A DNA stretch of 64,000 bases, taken from positions 1 to 64,000 of the IMG/VR virus record IMGVR_UViG_3300013093_000017. The stretch is one strand, 5' to 3'. Positions 37,744 to 59,781 of this stretch are shown here, piece by piece. Position 1 is the stretch's first letter, and each line of letters begins with the position of its first letter. The position numbers and the translations under genes were made by a program. Below the pieces are notes generated by a model, which was not told the DNA's origin, did no database searches, and saw only the letters and a program-made list of their open reading frames with translations.

Positions 37744-38122
37744 AATAACATTAATTACTCCTCCAGACATTTATCAAAATGATCAAGAAAGTATATTGTT
37801 CATAGACCTTAATGAAATTGAACAGGATTTAGTCAGCACTTGGTTAGGCAAAGCAGACCTTAGTCTTAATATCTATTTCTATCAAGGCGAAGCTAATGTT
37901 CCTTGGCTATTACACTCTCTATCTTGTTCTCAATATAGATATGTAAACTTAAATAACATGTCACCGGTAGTATCGTATCTAGCTGGATACATATTATCTA
38001 AACCTGGGGTTTGTTATAGCACAAGCGACGACAACGTAGCCGAACTATACAGCCACATTAACCTTAATCGCGTAGACGACGTTATTAAATTTTTGGAAAG
38101 ATCATTCAATGGACAAGAATAA
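37733..38122 (+). CDS. Hypothetical protein
   Basis: Overlapping operon gene. Confidence 0.6.
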   Translation: MTAKITLITPPDIYQNDQESILFIDLNEIEQDLVSTWLGKADLSLNIYFYQGEANVPWLLHSLSCSQYRYVNLNNMSPVVSYLAGYILSKPGVCYSTSDDNVAELYSHINLNRVDDVIKFLERSFNGQE

Positions 38123-45397: not shown

Positions 45398-45612
45398 AGG
45401 TTCGGATACGCGATATACCCTCAGCGTTTCATAATGCCAATCAAGCTGTAATTGCCAAAGGTGGCTTTGGGTTAGAGAGATTCAGTCACATAGACGCATT
45501 TGAACAGGCTTACAATGTTAAGATTATTCAAAGTGCATGGGGTTCCTGGGATGAATTAGAGTTTCCTAGCAGTGAAGCATATACTTGGTTTATGTTAAAG
45601 TGGGGATGTTAA
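45394..45612 (+). CDS. Small paralogue (F-x-L-R/K-W/F family)
   Basis: EFPSSEAYTWFMLKWG. Confidence 0.65.
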   Translation: MKVRIRDIPSAFHNANQAVIAKGGFGLERFSHIDAFEQAYNVKIIQSAWGSWDELEFPSSEAYTWFMLKWGC

Positions 45613-45884
45613 TGAGAGCAGCACCAGCAGAACGACATATGGCAGAACATCAGCTACTCAATCAAGGGTGGCAGGCTGTTCGCATACCCAAAGTCCAACC
45701 ACGATCCTATTACAGTATGATGAAGTGGTGTGAGGATACTCTTGGACCGGGCAGACCAGAACCTGGCCATAATTGGTTAGATGGAGAAGATGTTTGGTAC
45801 ACATTTAGTTGGTTTGGGTATTATAATTTTCACTTTAAGAATGAGCGTGATGCTACTATGTTTATATTAAGGTGGGGAGGATGA
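45612..45884 (+). CDS. Small paralogue (F-x-L-R/K-W/F family)
   Basis: HFKNERDATMFILRWG. Confidence 0.65.
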   Translation: MRAAPAERHMAEHQLLNQGWQAVRIPKVQPRSYYSMMKWCEDTLGPGRPEPGHNWLDGEDVWYTFSWFGYYNFHFKNERDATMFILRWGG

Positions 45885-46093
45885 GAATATTGAACAAGAA
45901 GTATTGGCCGCATCGTGTGAAACTTGAATGTAAGACCTATGATAATTTTGATGATATGCGTGCTTGGTTACATAGTTCACTCAAGTGTGAGTGGCAGGTG
46001 GTACAGGGCATGAGCGATAAGACTCTAGACTTCTACTTCAAAGAAGCCAAGTATGCAACCTTGTTTATGTTAAAGTGGGGAGAACACCAATGA
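45881..46093 (+). CDS. Small paralogue (F-x-L-R/K-W/F family)
   Basis: YFKEAKYATLFMLKWG. Confidence 0.65.
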   Translation: MRILNKKYWPHRVKLECKTYDNFDDMRAWLHSSLKCEWQVVQGMSDKTLDFYFKEAKYATLFMLKWGEHQ

Positions 46094-46347
46094 GCAAATC
46101 TGTTATAATGTCGCCGCCCGGCTGGGATAGACTTAATGCTCGTTTGGTCAATGATCACAAACCTAGTATAATGTTGATACGTGAAAAGATGCGTCGAGTG
46201 TTGGGATTTACTGTTCGTACGCACAACTACTACAACACAGATGATGACTACTACGTAGAAGAAGTACACCTTGACTTCTACGATGAAGCTAAACGTACTA
46301 TGTTCTTATTAAAGTATTCGGAATATCTAGATGAAAAAGTTCGATAA
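46090..46347 (+). CDS. Small paralogue (F-x-L-R/K-W/F family)
   Basis: DFYDEAKRTMFLLKYS. Confidence 0.65.
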   Translation: MSKSVIMSPPGWDRLNARLVNDHKPSIMLIREKMRRVLGFTVRTHNYYNTDDDYYVEEVHLDFYDEAKRTMFLLKYSEYLDEKVR

Positions 46348-46522
46348 CGAACCCTACGATCAATATATTAAACGTGTTAGGATACACGAGCTTGGCATTG
46401 CCTTACAAGCATTGGCCAACGGGGGTGATCCTAAGTTAATTCTAACGGCCATGAGTATGCGTATTGTAGACAAAGCTCTACATCCGTTATATAAGAAAAT
46501 AAATGAACAAAATATCACTTGA
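46331..46522 (+). CDS. Hypothetical protein
   Basis: 63 aa ORF in operon. Confidence 0.55.
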   Translation: MKKFDNEPYDQYIKRVRIHELGIALQALANGGDPKLILTAMSMRIVDKALHPLYKKINEQNIT

Positions 46523-46552
46523 CATTAAGTGTACATTTATCTATAATAAATA
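46519..46552 (+). promoter_or_regulatory. Overlapping sigma70 and late promoters of hsp20
   Basis: TTGACA-N17-TATAAT running into AATAAATA. Confidence 0.75.
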
Positions 46553-46629
46553 GTGTTGTAGAGCACCTTATGGGCTTTACACAATGGGCAAACTGCCCCT
46601 TATGATTCTTACTTATAAAGGAGAAAATT

Positions 46630-47064
46630 ATGAATCAATTAGTACGCTTTGACACAAACTCTTTGAATAGAGTATTTTTAGGATTTGATACATTGTTTAA
46701 CGATTTAGAAAATCGTATCGCAAATCAAGTCAACAATAACTATCCACCTTACAATTTCTTAAAGCACGACGATGACTCATATGAGATACAGGTCGCTGTT
46801 AGCGGATTTGATCCAGATGAGGTTACTGTTGAAGTTAATCAAGATCAATTAATTGTTAAAGGTCAACGCAAAAATCCTAATGATGAAGATGCTAATTATC
46901 TACATCGTGGGCTAGCTGGGCGAGACTTTGTTCGCTCTTGGACACTAGCGGATCACATCGAAGTAGGTAAAGGTCGTATCAAAAACGGAATTCTTACTGT
47001 AGAACTTACACGAATAATTCCAGAGGCATTAAAACCTCGTTTAATCAAAGTCACTGCTGAGTGA
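46630..47064 (+). CDS. Small heat-shock protein (Hsp20/IbpA-like)
   Basis: YPPYN, IQVAVSGF, YLHRGLAGRDF, NGILTVEL. Confidence 0.92.
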   Translation: MNQLVRFDTNSLNRVFLGFDTLFNDLENRIANQVNNNYPPYNFLKHDDDSYEIQVAVSGFDPDEVTVEVNQDQLIVKGQRKNPNDEDANYLHRGLAGRDFVRSWTLADHIEVGKGRIKNGILTVELTRIIPEALKPRLIKVTAE

Positions 47065-47113
47065 TAATCCGGGAGGGGAAACCCTCCCTTACATACTATA
47101 GAATGGATATATA

Positions 47114-47416
47114 ATGGCTGAAGCTATCACCACAAGAAAAGACCAAACAAAGAACAAACTAAAAGAACCGGGTAAATTTAAGGTTGTTGTATTAAACGAT
47201 GACTTCACACCTATGGATTTTGTTGTAGCAATGTTTATGGCTGTGTTCAAACATTCAGAAGCACAGGCAGTTGATCTTACAATGAAGATTCATAATGATG
47301 GGTCAGCAATCGCTGGGATTTACACCTATGAAATCGCAGAACAGAAAGCAATTGACTCAACTACGCTGGCACGCGAAAATGGTCATCCACTCCAAATTAA
47401 GGTAGAACCAGAATGA
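47114..47416 (+). CDS. clpS: ClpS N-end-rule adaptor
   Basis: FKVVVLNDDFTPMDFVV...IHNDG.AIAGIYTYEIAEQK...GHPL. Confidence 0.93.
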   Translation: MAEAITTRKDQTKNKLKEPGKFKVVVLNDDFTPMDFVVAMFMAVFKHSEAQAVDLTMKIHNDGSAIAGIYTYEIAEQKAIDSTTLARENGHPLQIKVEPE

Positions 47417-47943
47417 GTTTGAAAGATCTAACCTGGGCCAAACACCAGGCGGCAGAAGATACGCCTTTCATGAAGGCAGTATTCAACCAAAAGATGCCCG
47501 AATCAGTTTGGGCAGACTATACATACAACAAAATGTTGTGGTACGGTGCTATTGAATCAAAAGCACGGGCAGAAGGTTTGTTAGATGATTTGCCAGGTAT
47601 CGAACGTGCATACTTCTTATGGCAAGATAGTAATGAAATGTTTGAAGGTAACTTTCCTCGTTGCAAACAAATAGCACGTGAATATCAATTATATATTTTC
47701 AATTTAGAGCCAGGCAAGGTCCTAGCACACTTGTACACATGGCACATGGGCGATTTATTTGGTGGACAGATGATTAAGAAAATGTTGCCAGGTCCACACC
47801 GTAATCTAGAGTTTAAAGAAGCAGATGATCTAAAGCGTGCTATCCGAAGCAAACTTACAGATGATCTAGCACCGGAGGCTAATATCGCATTTGATTGGGC
47901 TATCCGTATTATGAACAGTTATAATGACCAGTTCGATATTTGA
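47413..47943 (+). CDS. Heme oxygenase
   Basis: LKDLTWAKHQAAE, AHLYTWHMGDLFGGQMI. Confidence 0.85.
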   Translation: MSLKDLTWAKHQAAEDTPFMKAVFNQKMPESVWADYTYNKMLWYGAIESKARAEGLLDDLPGIERAYFLWQDSNEMFEGNFPRCKQIAREYQLYIFNLEPGKVLAHLYTWHMGDLFGGQMIKKMLPGPHRNLEFKEADDLKRAIRSKLTDDLAPEANIAFDWAIRIMNSYNDQFDI

Positions 47944-48601
47944 TCAAAGTACAGCCTGCGCAGACGAAATACTAAAACGTTTTCAAAAAGTAGGTACTAC
48001 ACATAAAGAAAACTACACTGAGGATTATCCCAGTGTAGATTTTTCTTTTGAAAGCCCTAACTTTCGTAGAGCACATCTTAGCATAGTAGATGCACGTGAG
48101 ACTAAGAAAGTGTGGATGATGCATTGCTGTATATTCCCAAACCTAACAGATCCTAGTCCAATATTTGGATTTGACATCATTGCTGGTCCTAGCCGTGCAA
48201 GTGGAGCATTTCAGGATTTTTCGTGCGGCGGCGATATTGATCACCCTATGATAAAGTGGTTTAGCAAGCGTGCTGAACAAGCGGCATGGCAGCGTGAGCG
48301 TGAACTGCCAGAGTGGGGACAACGCATATTCAGCAAAGATATGGTTGCTGTGGGCAACCTAGATGATCTTGAGTTATACAAGTTTGTTAAGTTTGGTTTA
48401 GAAAACCTAGACTACTATCTTGCTAATGTTGGTGCTACTCGTGGACAACGATTAGACACTAGAGGAAAACAAAACTACTATTGTGAAAATCAAAAGTTAA
48501 ATCCCCACACTCCTAGATTTATGCAGAGTCTAGGACTTACTGAACTACAGGCCACTAAATTCATGAACGAAGTCTTGTTCCCAGAGTTAGATAAATATTA
48601 G
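47924..48601 (+). CDS. Ferredoxin-dependent bilin reductase (PcyA/PcyX-like)
   Basis: FRRAHL, MMHCCIFP, PIFGFDIIAG, ELPEWG.RIFS, LNPHT. Confidence 0.85.
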   Translation: MTSSIFDQSTACADEILKRFQKVGTTHKENYTEDYPSVDFSFESPNFRRAHLSIVDARETKKVWMMHCCIFPNLTDPSPIFGFDIIAGPSRASGAFQDFSCGGDIDHPMIKWFSKRAEQAAWQRERELPEWGQRIFSKDMVAVGNLDDLELYKFVKFGLENLDYYLANVGATRGQRLDTRGKQNYYCENQKLNPHTPRFMQSLGLTELQATKFMNEVLFPELDKY

Positions 48602-48603
48602 CT

Positions 48604-49662
48604 ATGAGAGCAAAAGAATTCCTTAAAGAAGATCCGGCAAAGATCAGTCAAATTGCGCAAAGTGTACAAAAAATACCACCTAATGCTGATCCACGATTAT
48701 TACAGAAGCTTCAGGATTTGATAGATTTAGCTATTAATGGACCTGAAGCTGCACCTAAACCTAACACGCCATCAACATACGGAGCGGTTGCTACACCCCT
48801 TTCGAATGTAGAAGATCGCGATGTTAGAGCACATTATAAAGTAATGGCTAAATTTATGATTGGAAACGGATTAACCTCACAAGAGATTAAAGATATAATC
48901 CGTGGATTACAAGAAGACAAGCTAATAAGTATAGCTGCGTTAACTTCAACATCTAGTGATCTTTCAAAGATTATTCCTTATTATAATACATCACCTGAAG
49001 TAGCTCATTATTTTGATGATATGTTAATGTATCAACCAGGGCAACGAATTGGTCCAGGAGAAATTCTATTTGCCACACATAGTAAAAATTTAACTAAAGG
49101 TGTAAAAGGTGACCTAACAGTTATTAGTGATAATCGCGAAATTGAAGTTAAAGGTGGAAAAACTGCTGGAAGATTTAGTGATGATGATGTAAAAACAAAT
49201 ATTGCTCCGTATTCGGCAGCAGTTGCAAACTTTATGAACAAATACAGTTCATTAATTAAAGGGGCAGGTAAAAGCGGGTATTCTATGGAACATATAGTAG
49301 CCGGAATGAACGCTAATCCAGATATGGCCAACGAGATCGCATCAGATGCTACTGCTACTATAGGAGCACTATGGGGATCTAATAATAGGTATATTCCTGA
49401 AATAGAAAAAGCATTAAAAAACAAAGATCCAAAAAATGCACTATACTATCACGGGTTAGCTAACTTAGACATCTATTTTGGAGCTAAAGCGGCAGGAATG
49501 GGTATACTGTTTATTCATGCCGGTCAATCTCCGGCACACACAAATTATGCCGATAGTTTAGAAGATCTAATCAAAGTGAGTAATATTACTGTCAGTTCTG
49601 CATATCCTATATCACCTAGACCAGCTGAAGCATTTCCTAAGATTTCTGCTTTAGCAAAATAA
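48604..49662 (+). CDS. Hypothetical late protein with nuclease-like motif
   Basis: GPGEILF...GDL...IEVKGG; GATAAATA upstream. Confidence 0.55.
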   Translation: MRAKEFLKEDPAKISQIAQSVQKIPPNADPRLLQKLQDLIDLAINGPEAAPKPNTPSTYGAVATPLSNVEDRDVRAHYKVMAKFMIGNGLTSQEIKDIIRGLQEDKLISIAALTSTSSDLSKIIPYYNTSPEVAHYFDDMLMYQPGQRIGPGEILFATHSKNLTKGVKGDLTVISDNREIEVKGGKTAGRFSDDDVKTNIAPYSAAVANFMNKYSSLIKGAGKSGYSMEHIVAGMNANPDMANEIASDATATIGALWGSNNRYIPEIEKALKNKDPKNALYYHGLANLDIYFGAKAAGMGILFIHAGQSPAHTNYADSLEDLIKVSNITVSSAYPISPRPAEAFPKISALAK

Positions 49663-49755
49663 TATACCAACATAACTCATTGTTTCTACAGATATCTACC
49701 AACTTAATCTAGATTAAACTCTCCGTAAATAGTTACACACTACCTCGGAGAGAAA

Positions 49756-50211
49756 ATGCGAACAATTGTTCGAATACTAATCTGCAATCTTTTAATGGTC
49801 GCCAGTTTGTCTGCCGCACCTCTACAAGACTTTCAATTCAAAAGTCCAAGTTTCAACGGCAATGGATATGGCACCTATGTGCTAACCATTCAGAACGAAG
49901 AATATACCCGTACACAAGCAATACAACAGGCATTAGAAGCAGCTAAACAAGCCGCAGCCACCGCAGCAGCTAATACTCCATTAAATCAATTCTTAACTAA
50001 TTTAGAAAGCCGTGTACTGGCACAGGTAAGTCAAAACCTAGCCACAGCTATGTTTGCTCCGGGAGCGGCCACAAGTGGAACATTTAACTTCCAAGGTAAT
50101 ACAATATTTTGGCAGAACAATGGCGGTAGTATAACATTACAAGTAACAGATAGTTTGGGCAATCAAACAACTATCAATGTGCCATTAGGATCATTTACAT
50201 TTACACCATAA
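49756..50211 (+). CDS. csgF: Curli assembly protein CsgF-like
   Basis: Signal peptide, FQFKSPSFNGNG, FLTNLESRVLAQVS, GNQTTINVP. Confidence 0.85.
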   Translation: MRTIVRILICNLLMVASLSAAPLQDFQFKSPSFNGNGYGTYVLTIQNEEYTRTQAIQQALEAAKQAAATAAANTPLNQFLTNLESRVLAQVSQNLATAMFAPGAATSGTFNFQGNTIFWQNNGGSITLQVTDSLGNQTTINVPLGSFTFTP

Positions 50212-50993
50212 TGAAAAAACTATTAATCATCGCATTGTTATTATTGTTAAACGGCTGTGCTACTATACAGAAAGCAGGGCTTGAGCATGCTCCGGAACTA
50301 GCAAAAAACAAAATGGAAAAAGAGTTCGATGCTATTCCGGCTCCAGCAGGTCCTAGAGTGACTGTGGCAGTCTACAGCTTTAAAGATATGACCGGTCAGC
50401 GTAGAAATACACCAAACATAGCCAGCTTTAGCACTGCGGTAACGCAAGGTGCTGAGCCATTCTTAATCAATGCTCTACAAGAAGTAGGACATGGACAATG
50501 GTTTGATGTTGTGGAACGTGTAAACGTAGATAACTTGATCAAAGAACGTACTATTATTAAACAGATGCGAGATGCCTATGAAGGTAAAGAAGCTAAACCT
50601 CTAGCACCATTACAATTTGCCGGTATCATTATGGAAGGCGGTATTGTTGGATTTGATAGCAGTACAGAATCAGGTGGCATTGCTTATAAATGGTTAGGTA
50701 TTGGTCCACAGACACAATATTCAAAAGATATCGTAACAGTTAGTCTACGTGCGGTGAGTGTTAGTACAGGCAAAGTACTAACCACAGTAACCGTTACCAA
50801 AACTATTTACAGTACCGCAGACAGCATGGCTGTATTGAAGTTCTTCAAAGGTGGCACACAGGCTTTTGAATTTGAAAGTGGCTTAACTATTAACGAACCA
50901 GAAACACTAGCAGTTAAGACCACAGTCGAAGCGGCTGTGGTAGAGTTGATCAAGGAAGGTCAACAGAAAGGAATTTGGGACTATCGTAAGTAA
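50211..50993 (+). CDS. csgG: Curli secretion lipoprotein CsgG
   Basis: Lipobox LNGC, VAVYSFKDMTGQR, STAVTQGA, WFDVVER, EGGIVGFD. Confidence 0.93.
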   Translation: MKKLLIIALLLLLNGCATIQKAGLEHAPELAKNKMEKEFDAIPAPAGPRVTVAVYSFKDMTGQRRNTPNIASFSTAVTQGAEPFLINALQEVGHGQWFDVVERVNVDNLIKERTIIKQMRDAYEGKEAKPLAPLQFAGIIMEGGIVGFDSSTESGGIAYKWLGIGPQTQYSKDIVTVSLRAVSVSTGKVLTTVTVTKTIYSTADSMAVLKFFKGGTQAFEFESGLTINEPETLAVKTTVEAAVVELIKEGQQKGIWDYRK

Positions 50994-51057
50994 GACCCAA
51001 ATAATAAGAATCCGTCATTCGGATCATTAAGACAGTAACATGTCAAGGAGCAAGCAA

Positions 51058-51885
51058 ATGAAAAAGTCATATAAACTTTTGAGTTTAATTTTAGCATTAA
51101 CAACATCAGCAGCATTTGGTGCAGATAACAGCATCTATATTGAACAAAGCGGTAGCACATCTAATGTTACTGTAACTCAAGACGGTGCCGGCAACGTAAT
51201 GCGTGGTATACAAGGATCAGGTAGTGGTAATACTACTCCTTCTGTGATCTTTGGTAATAGCAATAATGTTACAATTGATCAAGTCGGTACTGGTAATACA
51301 TTAGACCTTGGTATTCAAACCAGCACAGTTAACGGTGTAACTAATGGCAACAACTTTAGCTATACAGTTAATGGTAATAATGCTACAGCTATTATTGATA
51401 GTAATAATAATGGACAAGGTGTAAGTGGAAGTAACAATGTATCAGTTACTCAAAACGGTAATAACGCTAATCTTGATATTAATCTATTAGGTAATACTAA
51501 TAATATTACAGCAACTACCACAGGTGGTGCAAATAACAGTTTAGTATCTACTATTAATGGTAACGATAATAGTCAAACTATTAGTGTAACTGGTGCTAGC
51601 AATAGTCTTGTGGTTAATCAAGGTATCGGCGGTAGTGCGTTAACAACTGGACAATCTGCTACAACTAACAGCAATGGTAGTGTAGATATTACTATCGTAG
51701 GCACTAGCAACGTTCTTAATCTAGCACAGACCAGTGCTGGATATACCAACACCGCAGTGGTTAGTTTAGATGGATCAAGCAACGTTACTAATATCACACA
51801 AAATGCCGCAGCAGGTAACACTACTGTAAATCTTCACAGTGTAGGCAGCAGCAATAACTTTACGATCAATACTAACGCTCACTAA
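51058..51885 (+). CDS. Secreted curlin-like repeat protein
   Basis: Signal peptide; repeats of I/V-x-Q-x-G-x-x-N; Asn/Gly/Ser/Thr-rich. Confidence 0.75.
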   Translation: MKKSYKLLSLILALTTSAAFGADNSIYIEQSGSTSNVTVTQDGAGNVMRGIQGSGSGNTTPSVIFGNSNNVTIDQVGTGNTLDLGIQTSTVNGVTNGNNFSYTVNGNNATAIIDSNNNGQGVSGSNNVSVTQNGNNANLDINLLGNTNNITATTTGGANNSLVSTINGNDNSQTISVTGASNSLVVNQGIGGSALTTGQSATTNSNGSVDITIVGTSNVLNLAQTSAGYTNTAVVSLDGSSNVTNITQNAAAGNTTVNLHSVGSSNNFTINTNAH

Positions 51886-51896
51886 GGGCTACAGTA

Positions 51897-53018
51897 ATGC
51901 GTAAACTACTACTTCTTGTGCTGTTCAGCATTTCACTGGACAGCACAGCTTCAGTAGGCACAATCACAGAACAAACATCAGTGCCTGGCAGTATTCTGCG
52001 GGCAAGCAAAACATTGCCGGGAACCAAAGGCCAAGGTGTAGAAATGGCAGATGCTATTGCCACAACCAAAGGCAAGGTTGGTATTACATTTGAAGATCAA
52101 ACCAAAGTAGAAGTTAATGATAACAGTAAATTAGTTATTGATGATTTTGTCTACGATCCAAAGAAAGGATCGGGTAAACTAGCAATGAAATTCACTGCTG
52201 GCACAGTGCGCTATGCTAGTGGTGCTATTGCACACAATGATCCAAGTAAGGTAGCCTTAAACACCCCTAGCGCGACCATAGCAGTGCGCGGTACTGACTT
52301 CAGTGCTACTGTAGACGAAACTGGTGCCAGCACTATCGTCCTATTGCCAAGTTGTCCCCTAGGTTGGGTTGATATTGAACGTGACTGCAAGACGGGTGCT
52401 ATTGATGTTATGAACGAGGCAGGTAGTGTTAGTCTAACCAAACCATTCCAAGGCACCAAGGTAGAGAATCGTAATACAGCACCAATGAAGCCTGCTATAT
52501 TAAATCTAACCTTAGATACTATTAATAATCTATTAATCATTAGCCCACCTAAAGAAATTGACAAACACAAAATAGAAAAAGGTGATGCCGAAACTAAGGA
52601 AGCAGGTAATATGCTTGATCAAAACTTTCTTAAACAAGATTTCCTAAAGAATGAATTTGATGTAGAAGGGCCTGTTTGGACCGACCCACTTAATCAACCA
52701 CTGCTTCAACAGTATTTTCTAGAGAACATCTTTAACATATTGTCAGATCAACTGGCAGAAGAATCACAAAATTTATTAAAGAATCAACTTGATCCAAAAA
52801 CGCAGTTATTGCCAGACTGGTTTAAATCAAGTCAGATCACAGTAGCACAAGATCCTACCAGTGTAACTCTATGTCGCCCAGACGGCAGTAGCAATGTAGA
52901 GTGCGTTAAGACTCCACACGATCAAAGCACCACAGTTTATATGACACAGGGTAGTGTGACATTTAAGAATCGTATCAATCAAGGAAATAATACTATTATT
53001 ATTCTAAAACAAAACTAA
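51897..53018 (+). CDS. Secreted FecR-domain protein
   Basis: ITFEDQTKVEVNDNSKL, GTVRYASG, TPSATIAVRGTDF. Confidence 0.85.
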   Translation: MRKLLLLVLFSISLDSTASVGTITEQTSVPGSILRASKTLPGTKGQGVEMADAIATTKGKVGITFEDQTKVEVNDNSKLVIDDFVYDPKKGSGKLAMKFTAGTVRYASGAIAHNDPSKVALNTPSATIAVRGTDFSATVDETGASTIVLLPSCPLGWVDIERDCKTGAIDVMNEAGSVSLTKPFQGTKVENRNTAPMKPAILNLTLDTINNLLIISPPKEIDKHKIEKGDAETKEAGNMLDQNFLKQDFLKNEFDVEGPVWTDPLNQPLLQQYFLENIFNILSDQLAEESQNLLKNQLDPKTQLLPDWFKSSQITVAQDPTSVTLCRPDGSSNVECVKTPHDQSTTVYMTQGSVTFKNRINQGNNTIIILKQN

Positions 53019-53581
53019 TGCGTAAACTACTCTTACTTTTATTATTTTGTACTAGTGCATGGGCCGATTCGGGCATCTACATAGATCAGGTTGGCAGCAA
53101 TAACCAAATCACTATTACACAAGACGGAGATGGACATTCTATAAATCTTACTCTAGGTAAAGATAGCCCACTTGACAATTCTATTATTAATATCACACAA
53201 CAAGGACTAGGCGCCAAGAATGCCAATATAGATATGCCCGGCGGCTATAATAACACAGTGCGAGTCAGTCAAGACGGCAACGGAAGTCAAACTGCGAATA
53301 TTACCTCACTCAGTGGTGCTGCTAATTCTGTTGATATAACCCAATCCGGTGCGAGTAATAATACATTTAATATACTAGGTCTCGGTATTAACAATGCTAA
53401 TACTATTACTGCAACACAATCAGGCAATGCAGGCGCTGACAAGAGTTTCACCCTTAATATGAGCAATACCAATGGTGCTACAGTAAATATACAACAAACA
53501 AATCCCTCTCAACCAAATACTGGCAGTATGAGCATTAACTGTTATACAGGCTGCGGAACATACAGTTACATAAGAAACTAG
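53018..53581 (+). CDS. Second curlin-like repeat protein
   Basis: IDQVGSNN, ITQDGDG, ITQQG, VSQDGNG, ITQSG repeats. Confidence 0.75.
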   Translation: MRKLLLLLLFCTSAWADSGIYIDQVGSNNQITITQDGDGHSINLTLGKDSPLDNSIINITQQGLGAKNANIDMPGGYNNTVRVSQDGNGSQTANITSLSGAANSVDITQSGASNNTFNILGLGINNANTITATQSGNAGADKSFTLNMSNTNGATVNIQQTNPSQPNTGSMSINCYTGCGTYSYIRN

Positions 53582-53590
53582 GAGTAGTAA

Positions 53591-53755
53591 ATGACAAATC
53601 TAAGCGAAGCAATAGTTAGACTACATGATGTGGCAAGAAAGATTGAAAGAGAATTAGATTCAAAAAAATACAGTTCTGAAATACTTGAGATAGCTGATCT
53701 AATTACCAAAGTAGATTATAAACTTCGCATAGAAGAATACGACGCAAGAGATTAA
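53591..53755 (+). CDS. 54 aa hypothetical protein
   Basis: AGGAG RBS; MTNLSEAIVRLHDVARKIE... Confidence 0.55.
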   Translation: MTNLSEAIVRLHDVARKIERELDSKKYSSEILEIADLITKVDYKLRIEEYDARD

Positions 53756-53784
53756 TGTAATCAAACTGTAACACAAATTGTAAT
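53756..53784 (+). promoter_or_regulatory. Pho-box-like direct repeats
   Basis: TGTAAT, TGTAAC and TGTAAT at 53756, 53767 and 53779. Confidence 0.45.
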
Positions 53785-53833
53785 CTAACTATTTGATTTA
53801 TTTTATAAATACCATTCTAAAAGGAGATATGTT

Positions 53834-53992
53834 ATGAAACAACGTAAATTATTAAAACAGTTGTATCAAGCGTGCCTCGAACACGATACAGACAAGATCC
53901 AAGAGCTCAAGTTATTAGAGTTTCAGAAAATTTTGAAACACAAGTCCGAAGGTAAGTCGTTTGGTAGCAAATGGACTTTGGTAAGGATTTAA
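53834..53992 (+). CDS. 52 aa small protein, paralogue of 24408
   Basis: AAGGAG RBS; MKQRKLLKQLYQACLEH... Confidence 0.6.
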   Translation: MKQRKLLKQLYQACLEHDTDKIQELKLLEFQKILKHKSEGKSFGSKWTLVRI

Positions 53993-54001
53993 TCTTATTA
54001 C

Positions 54002-54027
54002 AAACCCGCTTCGGCGGGTTTATTTTT
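54002..54027 (+). terminator. Rho-independent terminator
   Basis: AAACCCGC-TTCG-GCGGGTTT. Confidence 0.8.
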
Positions 54028-54031
54028 GTTC

Positions 54032-54049
54032 TTGTAATATTGTTGTAAT
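54032..54049 (+). promoter_or_regulatory. Pho-box-like repeat upstream of the plcP-like gene
   Basis: TGTAAT at 54033 and 54044 (11-bp period). Confidence 0.5.
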
Positions 54050-54071
54050 CTAATTATGTTTAAATATTAGC

Positions 54072-54833
54072 ATGACTAAAGACATCATCAAATATAAAAC
54101 CATCTGTATATCAGATGTTCATCTTGGCACAAAAGACTGTCAAGCCGATGTATTAAACGACTTCCTCAAATATCATACCTGTGAAAATTTATTCCTAATC
54201 GGTGACATCATCGATGGGTGGAAAATACAGCAGAATAAATGGCGCTGGCGTCAGAGCCATTCAAACGTAATACGCAGAATATTAGGTATGGGTAAACACG
54301 GAGTTCGTGTTACCTATGTAACTGGCAATCATGACGAGTTCCTTCGTCCGTTTGTTGCTGAAACATTCCGTATGGGAAATATACATATTGTTAACCATGC
54401 AGAATATCGTAGCATAGATGGTGATTTATATTTTATCACTCATGGTGATATGTTCGACGGTATAACTCGTGCAGCCAAATGGTTAAGTTTCTTAGGTGAC
54501 AAAGCCTATGATTTTGTCTTATGGATCAATACAAGATTTAACTACATACGCCACAAAATGGGGTTTGGATATTGGAGTTTAAGTAAATACCTTAAACATA
54601 AAGTAAAGAAAGCATTAGATTTTATCTTTGAGTTTGAAATAACTGTAACTGATTATGCTGCTAAACGTGGGTTTGATGGAGTAATATGTGGACACATACA
54701 CACTCCGGAAATCAAAACTATGCCAAACGGTATTATCTATATGAATGACGGTGACTGGGTAGAAAGTTGTTCAGCCCTAGTAGAACACTATGATGGCCGT
54801 TGGGAAATAGTGTATTGGAATAAATCTATATAA
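54072..54833 (+). CDS. PlcP-like phospholipase C (LpxH-family metallophosphoesterase)
   Basis: SDVHLG, GDIIDGW, GNHDEFLR, HGD, CGHIH, NDGDWVESCSALVE. Confidence 0.85.
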   Translation: MTKDIIKYKTICISDVHLGTKDCQADVLNDFLKYHTCENLFLIGDIIDGWKIQQNKWRWRQSHSNVIRRILGMGKHGVRVTYVTGNHDEFLRPFVAETFRMGNIHIVNHAEYRSIDGDLYFITHGDMFDGITRAAKWLSFLGDKAYDFVLWINTRFNYIRHKMGFGYWSLSKYLKHKVKKALDFIFEFEITVTDYAAKRGFDGVICGHIHTPEIKTMPNGIIYMNDGDWVESCSALVEHYDGRWEIVYWNKSI

Positions 54834-55003
54834 TGTGGTTGCTGATGATATTATCCGTCAGCATAACTAATCCAAATGACATTCCTGGCATCGTAACTAT
54901 AGATTATAAAACGCAACAAGAATGCGAAGCAGCAATCGCTTCGATGACTTCGTGGTTAAAGTTTGATTCATTTAAGGTAACTGCGCAATGCCTGAAAAAA
55001 TAA
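54833..55003 (+). CDS. 56 aa small exported protein
   Basis: Hydrophobic N-terminus, Cys pair; overlaps both neighbours. Confidence 0.5.
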   Translation: MWLLMILSVSITNPNDIPGIVTIDYKTQQECEAAIASMTSWLKFDSFKVTAQCLKK

Positions 55004-56007
55004 TATTAATAATAACAGACAATCTAAGGAATCAAGTAAATGGCGTGGTCACAACGTTTAAAAGTATCGAAGCGCACGCAGCTTCTGATGGGTATCGCAT
55101 TGTTTATCTTGATCCCGGGCAGTTCGCTCATATTGATTGCCCTGGCTACCCTGAAGTTAAACTCAGCTGGCCTTGGAAGATTGGTCGTAAAATTAAGACG
55201 ATGGCTCCGGATTATATTCACATCGCAACCGAAGGTCCCTTAGGATTAGCCTCACGGTGTTATTTAGATTTCTTAGGTATAAGATATAACACCAGTTATC
55301 ATACCAAATTTCCAGAATTCTTAAACAAGATGTACAAGATTCCAGAATGGATAACCTACGCTTATATGCGCTGGTTCCATAAACACAGCGGTCGTGTGCT
55401 GACCACAACACAAACAATGGTTGATGATTTGCGGGCACGTGGATTTGATGGTGATATCATTCCTTGGACACGCGGCGTAGATCGTTCAATATTTAACAGC
55501 CTGCACCGAGGTGAAACAGTAGCAGGTCGCCCAATCTTAGTCAGTGTTGGCCGCGTTAGTAAAGAGAAAAACCTAGATGAGTTTTGCCAAATAGATTATC
55601 CGGACTGTACTAAGATAGTAGTAGGTGATGGACCGTATCGAAAAGAATTGGAATCCAAGTATCCAGATGTTATATTTGCTGGTGCTAAGTTTGGAACCAG
55701 TCTAGCAGAATATTATGCCAATGCGGATGTATTTGTGTTTACTAGTTTAACTGACACATTTGGCATCGTGATTATAGAAGCCTTAGCCTGTGGTACTCCA
55801 GTAGCGGCATATCCAGTACCGGGGCCTATTGATATATTAGAGCAAGGAGTTACTGGCTATATGTTCCGCGGGGATCTACGTACCGCAATAGACGGATGTC
55901 TAACATTAGACCGCAATGAGGTTGAACAGGCTAGCCAAAAATGGTCTTGGCAACACTGCTGGGACATTTTTCGTACCAATCTAATAGAAAAACAAAAAGA
56001 TTACTAA
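54988..56007 (+). CDS. GT4 glycosyltransferase (Agt-like glycolipid synthase)
   Basis: QVNGVVTT, IHIATEGPLG, YHTKFPE, VGRVSKEKN, DTFGIVIIEALACGTPV. Confidence 0.85.
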   Translation: MPEKIILIITDNLRNQVNGVVTTFKSIEAHAASDGYRIVYLDPGQFAHIDCPGYPEVKLSWPWKIGRKIKTMAPDYIHIATEGPLGLASRCYLDFLGIRYNTSYHTKFPEFLNKMYKIPEWITYAYMRWFHKHSGRVLTTTQTMVDDLRARGFDGDIIPWTRGVDRSIFNSLHRGETVAGRPILVSVGRVSKEKNLDEFCQIDYPDCTKIVVGDGPYRKELESKYPDVIFAGAKFGTSLAEYYANADVFVFTSLTDTFGIVIIEALACGTPVAAYPVPGPIDILEQGVTGYMFRGDLRTAIDGCLTLDRNEVEQASQKWSWQHCWDIFRTNLIEKQKDY

Positions 56008-56209
56008 TCTTTAATGATTTTCTGTATGTACTTTATGGGATTTTAGTGTATAATTATATATAAGTACTAGTAACAAGGAAGCAAAAGATTAGCAGACTTG
56101 TTGTAATACTTAAAGTGATCTCAAGTTGGACCTTTATCAAAACATCGATATCTCCAATGATCTGATTTGTTATTATTAATTTAATTTACAAATACAGGAG
56201 TAATATACT

Positions 56210-56281
56210 ATGTGGACTAAACCAGCAGCAACAGAAATGCGTTTCGGGTTTGAAGTCACGATGTATGTAATGAACAAGTAA
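56210..56281 (+). CDS. pqqA: PQQ precursor peptide PqqA, copy 1
   Basis: CAGGAG RBS; MWTKPAATEMRFGFEVTMYVMNK with E-x-x-x-Y. Confidence 0.92.
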   Translation: MWTKPAATEMRFGFEVTMYVMNK

Positions 56282-56343
56282 TTGTTCGTTCTACAGAGTG
56301 ATCAAACAAAATTGTTTTAATTAATCTCTAAAGGAGAAATATT

Positions 56344-56415
56344 ATGTGGACTAAACCAGCAGCTACTGAAATGCGTTTCGGGTTTGAAGTCACGATGTAT
56401 GTAATGAACAAGTAA
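56344..56415 (+). CDS. pqqA: PQQ precursor peptide PqqA, copy 2
   Basis: AAGGAG RBS; identical peptide with synonymous differences. Confidence 0.92.
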   Translation: MWTKPAATEMRFGFEVTMYVMNK

Positions 56416-56442
56416 TTGTTCTTACTATAAAGTGCATGAAAG

Positions 56443-56471
56443 AAAAAGCTCTACTTAGGTAGGGCTTTTTT
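56443..56471. terminator. Terminator overlapping the HNH gene end
   Basis: AAAAAGCTCTAC-TTAG-GTAGGGCTTTTTT. Confidence 0.75.
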
Positions 56472-56924
56472 ATTGGCTCTAGTTTGGGCTAAGGTTGCTC
56501 TAATCTTTGCGCGAGTTTCTTCACTAACCGCATGTCCTTTACGACTTTCTACCCAATTAGCTTTGTGCTCTTCGGATTTTACTTTTCCTTTCATTGCTTC
56601 AGACCGTTTTTTATTAATCTCTTCCCAGCGTCCTTCATCCTTTAGCCGTTGTAGATATTTTTTAGCACCTTCTGAATATCTTTCTTTTTCTTCATCGGTG
56701 CGTTTCTTACCCTTGTTAGCCATACCTTGTTTCATCCTTAATATTTCTTCTTGTCCTATGCGTCCAGACAATGCTTGCCAAGCACAGTAGTCTTGCCAAT
56801 TGCCGTGTTGTTCGTACAGCAAGCGATGTGCTTCTGCATGTTCTTCTACAGTGAGTTCTATTAGATTACTAGGATCGTCGTTGCCGCCTAGGTATTGTGG
56901 TATAATGTGATGTATATGTTTCAT
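56451..56924 (-). mobile_element. Free-standing HNH homing endonuclease with NUMOD3-like repeats
   Basis: HHIIPQYLGGNDDPSNLIELTVEEHAEAH; GKVKSEEHK and GHAVSEETRAKI repeats. Confidence 0.85.
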
Positions 56925-57078
56925 ACAGTTATTTATCATTGTTACTTCATAACCTATAAGTAAAATTTATTATGGTCATTAAAAAATACAATTAAAAAAA
57001 CCTATTAAAACCACTTGATTAATAGGTAAACTTGGATATATAATATATGTATATTAACAATTTAACAAGGAGAGTAAT

Positions 57079-57642
57079 ATGAAGATCGGACAACAAGTTC
57101 AACCATTCACTGCACAAGCATACCGTCAAGGTAAGTTTATCGAAGTTTCAGATCAAGCCCTACAAGGTAAATGGAGCATTGTGTTCTTTTACCCAGCAGA
57201 CTTTACATTTGTCTGCCCAACAGAACTAGCAGACCTACAAGATGTCTACGCAAGTGATTTCCAAGCACTAGGGGTTGAAGTATATAGCGTAAGTACAGAC
57301 ACACACTTTGTTCATAAAGCATGGGCCGATGCCACAGACACAATCCGTAATATCCAATATACAATGATTGGAGACCCTAATCATCAACTTGCTACACAGT
57401 TTGGTGTGTTAATTGAAGGCGAAGGACTAGCTGACCGTGGTACATTTGTCATTGATCCAGATGGTAAGATTCAAATCATTGAAATTAATCCAGGTGGTGT
57501 AGGTCGTGATGCTAAAGAATTACTACGCAAAGTTAAGGCAGCAAAATACACACGCGAACATCCAGGTGAAGTATGTCCAGCTAAATGGACAGAAGGTTCA
57601 GCTACTCTAGCACCTAGTTTAGACCTAGTAGGTAAACTATAA
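57079..57642 (+). CDS. ahpC: Peroxiredoxin AhpC
   Basis: [14 protein letters not shown] and GEVCPAKW. Confidence 0.96.
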
Positions 57643-57759: not shown

Positions 57760-59781
57760 ATGAGAAAACTTTTATTGAGTCCTTGGACTGCTTTATTAAC
57801 ACTTTGTCTTATTGTTGGATTGCGAATAGTAGATCCTCCATTTGTTGAAAGCGTAAGATTACGCTACTTTGATACACTAATAACCAGCAAATCTCCCACC
57901 ACTAATAATATCTACACTGTAAACATCGATGAAGCAACCTTAGACAAGTACGGACAATGGCCATTTAAGCGTGACATCTACGCTAATCTAATTGATAGTT
58001 TATACGCTCATAATGCTGGTCTAGTTGTTTGGGATATTATGATGCCAGAAAAGGATCGTCAAGGTGGCGATGCAACACTAGCCTCGGTACTGCAAACACA
58101 ACATAATGTTATTCTTACCAACATGCCTGCACAGGCCAGCAAGAATATTCCACGTAAACCAGGCAGTGCTGTAATTGGCAGTGACTATTTAGATACTATA
58201 ATTAACTATCCAGGCATTATTGCCAACATTCCAGAATTAGAAAAGAATGCCGCAGGCGTTGGTATTGCTAACACATTCCCAGAAGTAGATGGTGTTAACC
58301 GCAGACTACCTTTGTTTGTGGCCAGTAACGGTAATTTATATCCTAGTATTCCATTAGAAGTTCTACGTGTTCTAGTAAACACAACTACATTTCAAGTTAA
58401 GCTAAATGCCAACGGTGTTGAGAAAATGCGTGTTCCTGGATTTAATCCTATTAGCACAGACAGCCTAGGCCGTATCTGGGTAGACTGGAGTCAAAAATCA
58501 CAACAGGTATCAGCAGTTAATTTACCTAAAGACTTTGGCGGTGCTGTGGTCATTGTAGGTCTAAGTGCCGCAGGTTTAGCTAATCCGGTAGCAACCAGCA
58601 TGGGACCGGTATGGCCACAAGACATGCAGGCTGCTGTTGTTGGTACATTGGCCAACAACGTACACATTGAACGTCCAGACTGGGCAGATAGTGCTGAAAT
58701 ATTAGCATTGGCTCTAGTTGGTTTGTTGTTATTGTTCTTAACACGTTGGACCTACGTGGGATTAGCAAGTGTTGTAGTATTATCAGTAGGTGGTATCGCA
58801 GGTAGTATGTACGCATTTAGTCACGGTCTATGGCTATTTGATGCTACTGCATTTACTGTGGGCATAGTATTAGTATCATTACATGCCTATGGTGTGAAGT
58901 TTATAAGTGAGTTTTTACAGAAGCAGCAAATTAAGAAACAGTTTGGCACATACCTATCACCGGCAATGGTAGAGAAATTACAGAAGAATCCAGAACTATT
59001 AACATTAGGAGGGGAATCACGTGAATTATCAATCATGTTTACAGATGTCAGGGGCTTTACGAGTATTAGCGAGCATTACGGCAAAGATGTTCAAGGACTT
59101 ACTAAAATAATGAACCGTTATATGACAGCAATGACAGCAAAGATTATCGAGAATGAAGGCACCCTAGACAAGTATATCGGCGATGCGCAAATGGCTTTTT
59201 GGAATGCCCCTCTTGATGATCCGCAACATGCTAAGAATGCCGTTCGAACAGCACTAGAAATGATGGAGAGCTTAGATGCATTTAATAAAGAAGTTACAGC
59301 AGAGGGTATCCCAGCTTTCGGAATGGGATTGGGAATTAATACAGGAGTGGTCGTCGTTGGTAATATGGGTAGCAGTCAACGTTTCGATTATACTTGTCTT
59401 GGTGATGCTGTCAACTTGGCATCTCGCTTAGAAGGACAGAGCAAGCCATGCGGTGTTAAGATGATACTAGGTCCTGATACCGCAGCACAGGTTGAAGACG
59501 AATTCCCTACAGTAGAATTAGATTGCATTGCTGTTAAAGGTAAGACAGAAGGTGTTAAGATCTACACACTATCAACCTATCAACCTGAACACTATAAATT
59601 ACATAAGAAATATTTACTGGCTTACTATAATGGCGAATGGGAAGGTGCTATATTCCTAGCTAAACAGCTAAAGAAAGACGGTCCTACAGAAATGCGTCAA
59701 TACTATTATAATATGATAGAGCGTATGGAAGAAGGTAAACCAGAAAACTGGGACGGAACATTTAGGGCAACTAGTAAGTAA
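57760..59781 (+). CDS. CHASE2-domain membrane adenylate cyclase (class III)
   Basis: CHASE2 (IDEATL..YGQWP), 3 TM helices, FTDVRGFT, DKYIGD, RFDYT.LGDAVNLASRLE. Confidence 0.92.
   Translation: MRKLLLSPWTALLTLCLIVGLRIVDPPFVESVRLRYFDTLITSKSPTTNNIYTVNIDEATLDKYGQWPFKRDIYANLIDSLYAHNAGLVVWDIMMPEKDRQGGDATLASVLQTQHNVILTNMPAQASKNIPRKPGSAVIGSDYLDTIINYPGIIANIPELEKNAAGVGIANTFPEVDGVNRRLPLFVASNGNLYPSIPLEVLRVLVNTTTFQVKLNANGVEKMRVPGFNPISTDSLGRIWVDWSQKSQQVSAVNLPKDFGGAVVIVGLSAAGLANPVATSMGPVWPQDMQAAVVGTLANNVHIERPDWADSAEILALALVGLLLLFLTRWTYVGLASVVVLSVGGIAGSMYAFSHGLWLFDATAFTVGIVLVSLHAYGVKFISEFLQKQQIKKQFGTYLSPAMVEKLQKNPELLTLGGESRELSIMFTDVRGFTSISEHYGKDVQGLTKIMNRYMTAMTAKIIENEGTLDKYIGDAQMAFWNAPLDDPQHAKNAVRTALEMMESLDAFNKEVTAEGIPAFGMGLGINTGVVVVGNMGSSQRFDYTCLGDAVNLASRLEGQSKPCGVKMILGPDTAAQVEDEFPTVELDCIAVKGKTEGVKIYTLSTYQPEHYKLHKKYLLAYYNGEWEGAIFLAKQLKKDGPTEMRQYYYNMIERMEEGKPENWDGTFRATSK

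What the first reader, a model, noticed from the sequence alone, without database searches (positions are those of the whole stretch)
56210..56415. Two tandem phage-encoded PqqA (PQQ precursor) genes
Seen: two 72-nt ORFs missed by the ORF track, each with a strong RBS, encode the identical peptide MWTKPAATEMRFGFEVTMYVMNK and differ only at synonymous sites. They have an extended -10 promoter (TGTATAAT, about 56047-56054) upstream and a terminator downstream. Established: PqqA Glu and Tyr (ExxxY) are cross-linked by PqqE/PqqD to give PQQ, the cofactor of methanol dehydrogenases; PqqA is consumed stoichiometrically and methylotrophs often carry several copies. Inference: this is an auxiliary metabolic gene feeding host PqqBCDE to boost methanol oxidation during infection. 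The sequence recalls Methylophilaceae PqqA, suggesting that host. No pqqB-E genes are in this window.
Basis: partly seen in the sequence, partly recalled or inferred. Interest (0 to 1): 0.9.

Follow-up and report, generated by a model that had tools for sequence, protein, structure and literature searches.

The report
Tandem PQQ-precursor genes in a methylotroph phage
A very large phage of methanol-eating bacteria (Methylophilaceae) carries two working-looking copies of pqqA, the tiny gene whose peptide is turned into the cofactor PQQ; phage pqqA was already reported in 2020, but here the whole host gene cassette, including a conserved folded RNA leader, has been captured.

Summary
Two 72-nt ORFs (56210-56281, 56344-56415) encode the same 23-aa peptide and differ at two synonymous sites. 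Each has an AGGAG ribosome-binding site, and a hairpin plus T-run follows copy 2. The peptide scores well above threshold for PqqA (Pfam 42.4 bits against a 21.1 cut-off; TIGR02107 40.4 against 20). It is identical to PqqA in many Methylophilaceae genomes.

The window is nt 1-64000 of a 229,675-bp IMG/VR viral contig. The tandem pair recurs in independent assemblies, so it is not a chimera. No pqqB-E or methanol dehydrogenase was found in about 139 kb examined.

That function is inferred, not shown.

It is not new in kind. Coutinho et al. 2020 reported phage PqqA in Lake Baikal Methylophilaceae phages.

Three things appear new:
- More than 120 IMG/VR contigs and nine cultured methylophage records carry pqqA, none annotating it on its coding strand.
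- This phage's cassette matches a host tandem pqqA cassette end to end (leader, copy 1, spacer, copy 2, terminator).
- The leader is a covariation-supported RNA structure absent from Rfam.

The proposed TGTATAAT promoter lacks a -35 box and is not conserved in relatives.

The parts
56012..56116 (+). Upstream non-coding region; the promoter is not located. It contains the -10-like TGTATAAT at 56047-56054 and a block (AATGATTTT) shared with relatives and with host cassettes.
   Evidence: There is no -35 box, and TGTATAAT is not conserved in L297, L273 or L265. Other blocks of this region are conserved.
56117..56197 (+). Structured 5' leader of the cassette. P0 pairs 56117-56120 with 56164-56167. 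P1 pairs 56125-56130 with 56153-56158. P1a pairs 56136-56138 with 56147-56149. P2 is a hairpin at 56162-56197 that overlaps the 3' arm of P0.
   Evidence: The leader is homologous to the one upstream of host tandem pqqA cassettes. Among 91 unique leaders, the two unconstrained pair positions are always complementary. RNAalifold and pair counts give 97.3% of cells paired against 86.8% in shuffles (0 of 500) and 31-46% in slid controls. The single-sequence fold reproduces P1, P1a and P2. There is no Rfam match.
56196..56200 (+). Shine-Dalgarno AGGAG of copy 1
56210..56281 (+). pqqA copy 1 (23 aa, with the E-x3-Y motif at E15-Y19)
56282..56343 (+). 62-nt spacer. Its 3' part (TTAATTAA ... AAGGAGAAATATT) matches the region upstream of copy 2 in host cassettes. 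About 60 nt of the host spacer is absent. The Shine-Dalgarno of copy 2 is at 56332-56336.
56344..56415 (+). pqqA copy 2 (identical peptide, two synonymous differences from copy 1)
56442..56472 (+). Intrinsic-terminator-like hairpin with a T-run. It overlaps the 3' end of the convergent HNH gene.
   Evidence: Host cassettes and relatives have a terminator at the equivalent position.
56451..56939 (-). HNH endonuclease gene, inserted between the pqqA cassette and ahpC. This is context, not part of the cassette.
   Evidence: Pfam HNH. It is absent at this position in L297 and L273 and inverted in L054.
57079..57642 (+). ahpC (peroxiredoxin), the conserved downstream neighbour of the cassette in related phages

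Best explanation
These are two functional copies of pqqA carried by a very large phage (at least 230 kb, probably over 330 kb) that infects freshwater Methylophilaceae.

Shown:
- The peptide is a bona fide PqqA, identical to the host's.
- The genes sit inside phage DNA in several independent assemblies.
- The cassette (structured leader, pqqA-1, spacer with its own ribosome-binding site, pqqA-2, terminator) is homologous end to end to a tandem pqqA cassette found in host genomes.
- All substitutions within this phage lineage are synonymous.

Inferred:
- The cassette was captured from a host as a unit.
- The two copies have since been kept alike by gene conversion.
- During infection the cassette is transcribed by host RNA polymerase and translated at high level.
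- Host PqqD/PqqE cross-link Glu15 to Tyr19, and host PqqF/G, PqqB and PqqC finish PQQ.
- Because each PQQ molecule consumes one PqqA peptide, and host gene expression probably declines after infection (itself an assumption), the phage copies would keep or raise PQQ supply for XoxF/MxaF methanol dehydrogenase. That would sustain energy and formaldehyde flux for phage replication.
- Two copies simply double the dose, as the 3-12 copies do in host genomes.
For: PqqA HMMs score above their thresholds. The identical peptide occurs in more than 120 Methylophilaceae loci, and at least one host locus has pqqA followed by a verified PqqB and by ORFs of PqqC/D/E size.

The window is nt 1-64000 of IMG/VR UViG 3300013093_000017. 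The same tandem pair is present, 100% identical over 800 nt, in a separate assembly from sample 3300013094. It is also present in a relative about 93-96% identical across the cassette (L297, L370) from other metagenomes, flanked by phage genes.

pqqA with a ribosome-binding site occurs in more than 120 IMG/VR contigs. It also occurs in nine isolate records spanning at least six named phages, classified in at least two families, Kyanoviridae and Zobellviridae (Melnitz x4, Venkman, P19250A, MEP301, MEP401, MEP402). This argues for repeated retention under selection.

The window and L297 differ only at synonymous sites. Copy-specific codons are shared between the two genomes, while lineage-specific codons are shared between the two copies within a genome, which indicates concerted evolution. 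Viral copies overall give pN/pS of about 0.17, a value biased low by the search pattern.

Cassette-level homology to the host is shown. From the literature: Methylophilaceae carry 3-12 pqqA copies and a single pqqBCDE (PMC4109929), and the same auxiliary-gene proposal was made for a Lake Baikal phage PqqA (PMC7678222).
Against: There are no expression, peptide or PQQ measurements. The promoter is not located. It is not known that PqqA supply limits PQQ synthesis in these hosts, and engineering studies report only modest gains from pqq overexpression (PMC9851590). About 90 kb of the 229-kb contig (and more of the inferred genome of over 330 kb) was not examined, so the phage may carry further pqq or xoxF genes that would change the picture. 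Host assignment is only to family level, because the peptide is identical across genera.
Confidence: 0.7

Rival explanations
1. Recently captured host DNA that is carried as a neutral passenger and confers no benefit on the phage.
For: Homology to the host covers the whole cassette, including non-coding parts, which suggests capture was not ancient. The neighbourhood is mosaic and includes a mobile HNH gene.
Against: The cassette is retained in relatives about 93-96%, 87-91% and 81-83% identical across it, with the peptide identical in the two closer relatives and three residues changed in L265. pqqA recurs in many unrelated methylophages, including small genomes of 35-44 kb where space is at a premium.
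Confidence: 0.12
2. The pqqA sequence serves mainly as a DNA homology patch. It could be an integration or recombination site matching the many host pqqA copies, or the conserved target next to which a homing endonuclease settles.
For: Host genomes hold many scattered pqqA copies. Some pqqA-bearing phages look temperate or carry recombinases nearby. An HNH endonuclease gene sits beside pqqA in the window and, in the other orientation, in L054.
Against: The ORFs are complete and have ribosome-binding sites. They diverge from host copies at synonymous sites while the peptide is conserved, which is a protein-level constraint. No integrase was seen in about 139 kb of this T4-like or jumbo genome. 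L297 and L273 keep the cassette without the HNH gene.
Confidence: 0.08
3. The captured leader RNA, rather than the peptide, is the active part. It would titrate a host factor that binds the pqqA leader and so de-repress the host's own cassette.
For: The leader is a conserved, covarying structure kept intact in the phage.
Against: None of the cultured methylophages checked has the leader, yet all keep the ORF. The ORFs in the window are under synonymous-only change.
Confidence: 0.05
4. An assembly chimera or host contamination of the viral contig.
For: The peptide is identical to the host's. IMG/VR contigs can contain host fragments.
Against: The junctions are the same in two samples. The cassette lies between phage genes in relatives L297, L273 and L265. 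GC content is even across the region, 0.36-0.39. The nearest host copy still differs at 5 of 72 nt.
Confidence: 0.02

Closest known systems
Phage-encoded PqqA of Lake Baikal viral population VP_266 (Coutinho et al. 2020, Microbiome, PMC7678222)
   Same: It is a PqqA precursor peptide gene in a large T4-like, low-GC phage predicted to infect Methylophilaceae, proposed as an auxiliary gene that boosts methanol oxidation. The companion genes overlap as well: ribonucleotide reductase in the window and S-adenosylhomocysteine hydrolase downstream on this genome.
   Different: That report describes a single gene, accompanied by a viral methanol dehydrogenase. Here there are two tandem copies with a host-type leader and terminator, and no methanol dehydrogenase in the roughly 139 kb examined. 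I did not compare the sequences directly, because the Baikal contigs were not fetched.
Host tandem pqqA cassette and multi-copy pqqA of Methylophilaceae (Beck et al. 2014, PMC4109929; loci L132, L133, L177, L231, L239)
   Same: The order is the same: leader, pqqA, spacer with its own ribosome-binding site, pqqA, terminator. The copy-2 peptide is identical, and the copy-specific ribosome-binding-site contexts match.
   Different: The host spacer is 104-131 nt against 62 nt here. Host copy 1 usually reads WTQP(Q/T), whereas both phage copies read WTKPAAT. The host also has one pqqBCDE cluster elsewhere, which the examined part of the phage lacks.
pqqA ORFs in cultured methylophages that lack a coding-strand annotation (Melnitz, Venkman, P19250A, MEP301, MEP401, MEP402) and in MW202481
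   Same: Each has a complete 23-24-aa PqqA ORF with a ribosome-binding site.
   Different: All are single copies without the structured leader, and the genomes are otherwise unrelated or only distantly related. The two isolate papers that could be searched (Melnitz PMC9004378, MEP301 PMC8024684) do not mention a phage pqq gene.
Cyanophage psbA and similar auxiliary genes for rapidly consumed host components (from general knowledge)
   Same: The logic is the same: the phage re-supplies the one pathway component that turns over fastest, so that host energy metabolism lasts through infection.
   Different: psbA encodes a protein subunit, and its expression and benefit have been shown experimentally. 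pqqA encodes a sacrificial peptide substrate, and nothing has been measured.

Membership tests
PqqA (Pfam PF08042 / NCBIfam TIGR02107) | Profile HMM score above the curated cut-off | tested here: met
   PF08042 scores 42.4 bits against a 21.1 cut-off. TIGR02107 (an equivalog model) scores 40.4 against 20.
PqqA (Pfam PF08042 / NCBIfam TIGR02107) | Short peptide (about 20-40 aa) with a conserved Glu-x3-Tyr, the residues cross-linked to form PQQ | tested here: met
   The peptide is 23 aa with E15-V-T-M-Y19. It is identical to PqqA peptides of Methylophilaceae genomes.
PqqA (Pfam PF08042 / NCBIfam TIGR02107) | Genomic association with pqqBCDE | tested here: not met
   There is no PqqB/C/D/E homologue in the window or in contig nt 60-81 kb (tblastn, best E 0.097). 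No relevant Pfam family appears among genes called up to about 139 kb. Most host copies are orphans too (PMC4109929), so this feature is typical of the family rather than defining for it.
PqqA (Pfam PF08042 / NCBIfam TIGR02107) | Acts as a substrate of PqqD/PqqE and is converted to PQQ | not testable with these tools
   Inferred only, from identity to the host peptide.
Viral auxiliary metabolic gene | Host-derived metabolic gene embedded in a viral genome, flanked by viral genes, and reproducible across assemblies | tested here: met
Viral auxiliary metabolic gene | Expressed during infection and alters host metabolism | not testable with these tools
   No transcript or metabolite data are available.
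PqqE (radical SAM/SPASM), as a candidate identity for window ORF 22078-23451 | Match to the PqqE model or to a host PqqE | tested here: not met
   The ORF is a radical SAM/SPASM protein (TIGR04085 33.7 bits against a 27 cut-off). Its best hits are other peptide maturases, all far below their cut-offs, and PqqE is not among the top 25. The PqqE-sized host ORF (398 aa, not verified by any model) gave no tblastn match to it.
Any Rfam 15 family, as a candidate identity for the leader 56117-56197 | Covariance-model match | tested here: not met
   There is no hit on the leader at gathering thresholds or at E up to 10.

The most novel reading that the evidence does not exclude
The leader upstream of the tandem pqqA cassette is a previously undescribed cis-regulatory RNA of Methylophilaceae, with mutually exclusive P0 and P2 helices that suggest a switch. 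Phages have captured the regulated cassette whole, so that phage PQQ-precursor supply is wired into host sensing. In addition, pqqA is a near-universal and so far largely unannotated hallmark gene of phages infecting Methylophilaceae, usable for host prediction.
Probability: 0.35. Interest if true: 0.65.

Novelty: new member of a known kind. Interest (0 to 1): 0.45.

Why it matters
Methylophilaceae (OM43, LD28 and relatives) are major methanol and C1 oxidisers in oceans and lakes. If their phages routinely re-supply the PQQ precursor, viral infection directly props up methanol oxidation at the moment of lysis, and pqqA becomes a simple marker for assigning uncultured phages to methylotroph hosts.

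There is also a practical annotation point. The gene is too short for standard gene callers. It has no coding-strand annotation in any of the deposited methylophage genomes that matched, and in several an antisense ORF is annotated in its place.

The leader RNA, if regulatory, would be the first handle on how the dedicated pqqA cassette is controlled.

Tried and rejected
I used degenerate DNA patterns instead.
- Megablast of window 44-64 kb against the phage collection found nothing.
- Melnitz shares only a few proteins at 23-43% identity, so it is a functional parallel and not a close relative.
- Tandem Repeats Finder reports no array, because there are fewer than two full periods and the spacer has diverged.
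- No PDB chain matches the peptide.
- The sigma-70 scan finds no promoter upstream of pqqA, and T4-type late promoters (TATAAATA) are essentially absent from the window.
- The window's radical SAM/SPASM ORF was considered as a phage PqqE and rejected.
- A simple in-phage duplication was considered as the origin of the pair. It is less likely than capture of a host tandem unit, because each copy keeps the host's copy-specific upstream context. Loss of one copy by recombination, or later gain, cannot be ordered with certainty for the single-copy relative L273.
- One contig-walk look-up failed because the gene starts with TTG.
- The walk stopped at about 139 kb of the genome. The rest was not examined.

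Full report
**1. The observation.**
Reading 55900-56700 and listing ORFs of at least 20 aa shows two ATG-initiated 72-nt ORFs at 56210-56281 and 56344-56415 on the + strand. Both encode the same 23-aa peptide. The two differ at two nucleotides (codons 7 and 8: GCA ACA against GCT ACT), and both changes are synonymous. AGGAG lies 9 nt and 7 nt upstream of the two start codons. A degenerate DNA pattern for the PqqA core matches the window exactly twice, with none expected by chance. Downstream of copy 2, a 13-bp hairpin (56442-56471) followed by a T-run folds at -16.6 kcal/mol in the centroid. The 8-mer TGTATAAT is at 56047-56054 as stated.

**2. Identity.**
The peptide scores 42.4 bits on Pfam PqqA (cut-off 21.1) and 40.4 bits on the NCBIfam equivalog TIGR02107 (cut-off 20). 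It carries the Glu-x3-Tyr pair (E15, Y19). Nearly all of these are Methylophilus, Methylotenera, Ca. Methylopumilus, Methylobacillus or unnamed Methylophilaceae, often with several loci per genome. This agrees with Beck et al. 2014, who counted 3-12 pqqA copies but a single pqqBCDE per Methylophilaceae genome (PMC4109929). In one host locus (L128, Methylotenera), pqqA is followed by an ORF that is PqqB by TIGR02108 (388 bits). After that come ORFs of 254, 92 and 398 aa, the sizes expected for PqqC, PqqD and PqqE.

**3. Is it a phage, and is the insert real?**
A pattern scan for tandem pqqA in IMG/VR returned one contig, IMGVR_UViG_3300013093_000017 (229,675 bp). The fetched part of it is 100% identical to window 45545-57367. 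Exact-protein look-ups show that the window is nt 1-64000 of JGI contig Ga0164296_1000012.

- A sister sample (3300013094) assembled the same genome independently as a 73.5-kb contig and a 259-kb contig. The 800 nt around the cassette are identical there, while the wider region is not identical throughout.
- By coordinate arithmetic the two sister contigs abut, which implies a genome of about 333 kb or more if they are collinear.
- The window encodes ribonucleotide reductase, T4-type endonuclease V, exonucleases, HNH and other homing endonucleases, GroEL, ClpX, Hsp20, a betaproteobacterial-type tmRNA, CsgG and curlin-like proteins, and a CHASE2 cyclase.
- Walking downstream to about 139 kb added a dTDP-sugar cluster, S-adenosylhomocysteine hydrolase, ClpP, SOD, SufCD, Cpn10, MazG-like, clamp loader, PhoH, a GH19 endolysin with a holin-like neighbour, DnaJ, ClpB and DNA polymerase B.
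- No capsid or terminase gene was reached, so viral identity rests on these genes, on the IMG/VR call, and on the parallels with phage Melnitz (tmRNA, curli genes, cyclase, pqqA).
- Related contigs L297 and L370 (about 93-96% identical across the cassette) carry the same tandem pair between phage genes, and L273 (87-91%) carries one copy.

A chimera is therefore very unlikely.

**4. No other pqq genes were found.**
The host PqqB and the PqqC-, PqqD- and PqqE-sized ORFs from L128 gave no tblastn match better than E = 0.097 in the window or in contig nt 60-81 kb. None of the Pfam families expected for PqqB-E or for PQQ-dependent dehydrogenases appears among the genes called up to about 139 kb. 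The window's radical SAM protein (22078-23451) has a SPASM domain and resembles peptide maturases. It reaches no equivalog cut-off and is not PqqE-like. The remaining 90 kb or more of the genome was not examined.

**5. How general is phage pqqA?**
A tblastn search of the peptide against 50,697 phage records found complete PqqA ORFs in ten records:

- Melnitz (four records)
- Venkman
- P19250A
- MEP301
- MEP401 and MEP402
- MW202481, a lambdoid-looking phage genome from Manatee Spring

In most of these records nothing is annotated there. In Melnitz and MW202481 an ORF is annotated on the opposite strand instead. Each fetched locus has one copy; 30 have the identical peptide, and there are 98 distinct nucleotide sequences among 111 copies.

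The literature library holds one report of phage PqqA, Coutinho et al. 2020, for Lake Baikal population VP_266, with the same auxiliary-gene interpretation (PMC7678222). The Melnitz and MEP301 papers do not mention a phage pqq gene.

**6. Anatomy of the cassette.**
Aligning window 56040-56475 with host loci that carry same-strand tandem pqqA pairs shows homology across the whole unit. The shared parts are a leader of about 90 nt, copy 1 with an AATAC-TATG context, a spacer whose 3' part and ribosome-binding site (AAGGAGAAATATTATG) are the same in host and phage, copy 2, TAATT, and a terminator hairpin.

The host spacer is 104-131 nt and the phage spacer is 62 nt. Host copy 1 usually reads WTQP(Q/T)AT and host copy 2 reads WTKPAAT or WTTPAAT. 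In the phage both copies read WTKPAAT.

Comparing the window with L297 shows two things. The copy-specific codons 7-8 are shared between the genomes, so the pair predates their split. The lineage-specific codons 16-17 are shared by both copies within each genome, which indicates concerted evolution. Every difference between the window and L297 is synonymous.

The single-copy relative L273 has the copy-1 signature followed by the copy-2 terminator. That fits either loss of one copy by recombination between the repeats or an ancestral single-copy state.

The HNH gene (56451-56939) is an insertion between the cassette and ahpC. It is absent in L297 and L273 and inverted in L054.

**7. The leader.**
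Two conserved blocks flank a variable hairpin. I scanned IMG/VR and the metagenome collection with a pattern that left the two suspected pairing positions free.

- The scans returned 17 IMG/VR loci and more than 120 metagenome loci.
- In all 91 unique leaders both free positions are complementary. The first pair is T-A, C-G, G-C or T-G, and the second is A-T or G-C.
- On a 38-sequence alignment RNAalifold predicts three nested helices, with compensatory changes in 8 of 13 pairs.
- Pair counting gives 97.3% of cells paired, against 86.8% in shuffles (0 of 500 reach the observed value) and 31-46% when partners are slid.
- Four pairs of the middle helix were fixed by my search pattern and say nothing either way. 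The outer and inner helices were not constrained.
- A further hairpin (P2) just before the ribosome-binding site also covaries between leader types. It overlaps the 3' arm of the outer helix, so the two cannot form together.
- The single-sequence folding energy is unremarkable (z = -1.2).
- No Rfam 15 family matches, and a search for pqqA together with riboswitch found nothing relevant.
- In the fetched genomes the leader precedes only the tandem cassettes.
- Fifteen IMG/VR contigs have the leader with a single pqqA. The cultured methylophages lack it.

**8. Promoter.**
The window has clear sigma-70-type promoters, TTGACA-N16-18-(TG)TATAAT. Examples lie before the tmRNA (24378), ahpC (57039) and the methyltransferase gene (60797). 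The TGTATAAT upstream of pqqA has no -35 box and is replaced by other sequence in L297, L273 and L265. The transcription start therefore remains unknown. By analogy with the host cassettes, it may lie just upstream of the leader.

**9. Mechanism and rivals.**
The most likely reading (0.7) is precursor supply. The phage makes PqqA, host PqqD/E, PqqF/G, PqqB and PqqC convert it, and PQQ sustains methanol dehydrogenase during infection. Two copies double the dose, as multi-copy pqqA does in hosts.

- Shown: identity, phage context, cassette homology and synonymous-only change.
- Inferred: expression, processing and benefit.
- Rivals: a neutral passenger (0.12), a DNA homology patch or homing target (0.08), a leader RNA decoy (0.05) and a chimera (0.02).

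**10. Verdict.**
The finding is real and correctly interpreted, but phage PqqA is already published, so it is a new member of a known kind. The added value lies in the breadth of unannotated pqqA among methylophages, the capture of the whole cassette from the host, and the covariation-supported leader RNA.

Noticed in passing
L242:19995-20069 (Melnitz), L251:2501-2572 (Venkman), L252:2501-2572 (P19250A), L253:2501-2572 (MEP301), L254:621-692 (MEP402), L001:2119-2190 (MW202481): Complete PqqA ORFs with ribosome-binding sites in cultured Methylophilales and Methylophilaceae phages. None is annotated in the deposited records on its coding strand, and in Melnitz and MW202481 an antisense ORF is annotated instead. 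Neither of the two isolate papers that could be searched mentions a phage pqq gene.
   Followed up: partly
window 56117-56197; alignment A2: A conserved, covarying RNA leader (three nested helices plus an alternative downstream hairpin) lies upstream of tandem pqqA cassettes in Methylophilaceae and some of their phages. It has no Rfam match.
   Followed up: partly
window 24494-24820 (+): A phage-encoded tmRNA of the betaproteobacterial type (RF01850, 165 bits) is preceded by a TTGACG-N17-TGTATAAT promoter at about 24355-24385. Melnitz also encodes a tmRNA.
   Followed up: no
window 32524-32594 (+): A tRNA found by Rfam (45 bits) but not reported by ARAGORN.
   Followed up: no
window 22078-23451 (+): A radical SAM/SPASM protein resembling peptide (RiPP) maturases. 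It is below every equivalog cut-off and is not PqqE-like. No precursor peptide gene was looked for nearby.
   Followed up: partly
window 25745-27364, 38109-39341, 46630-47064; L257-L259 and L393 downstream: An unusually full chaperone and protease set for a phage: GroEL, ClpX and Hsp20 in the window, and ClpP, Cpn10, DnaJ and a ClpB-like protein further along the genome. Hsp20 homologues also lie within a few kb of pqqA in about ten other viral contigs.
   Followed up: no
window 50211-53581: A curli-like module (CsgG, two curlin-repeat-like proteins and a FecR-domain protein), paralleling the curli genes described for phage Melnitz.
   Followed up: no
window 57760-59781 (+): A CHASE2-sensor adenylate/guanylate cyclase. 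It is 43% identical to the partial Melnitz cyclase gene and is conserved next to ahpC and pqqA in L273, L265 and L054.
   Followed up: partly
window 56451-56939 (-): A free-standing HNH endonuclease gene inserted between the pqqA cassette and ahpC. It is absent in relatives L297 and L273 and lies in the opposite orientation beside pqqA in L054, which suggests a mobile homing gene associated with this locus.
   Followed up: partly
window 14072, 24378, 30259, 32510, 39564, 42227, 46542, 57039, 60797, 63131: A set of near-consensus sigma-70 promoters (TTGACA-N16-18-TATAAT, often TGTATAAT). They imply heavy use of host RNA polymerase.
   Followed up: partly
window 47924-48601 (+): A ferredoxin-dependent bilin reductase-like protein (Pfam Fe_bilin_red, 58 bits). 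This is unexpected in a phage of a non-photosynthetic methylotroph.
   Followed up: no
window 1-110: Three independent assemblies (229.7-kb, 73.5-kb and a 9.1-kb Logan contig) all begin within about 110 nt of window position 1. This suggests a physical genome end or a repeat there.
   Followed up: no
L255:13063-14355; L256-L258: Further host-like metabolic genes lie downstream on the same genome: S-adenosylhomocysteine hydrolase, Fe/Mn superoxide dismutase, SufC/SufD, PTPS (QueD-like) and UvdE. The SAM-cycle gene echoes the Lake Baikal methylophage report.
   Followed up: no
phage records CAKLQF020000010.1 and CAKLQH020000055.1: Weak PqqA-like matches (78% over 18 aa, E = 0.01) in two 'Acinetobacter phage MD-2021a' records. 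They were not examined.
   Followed up: no
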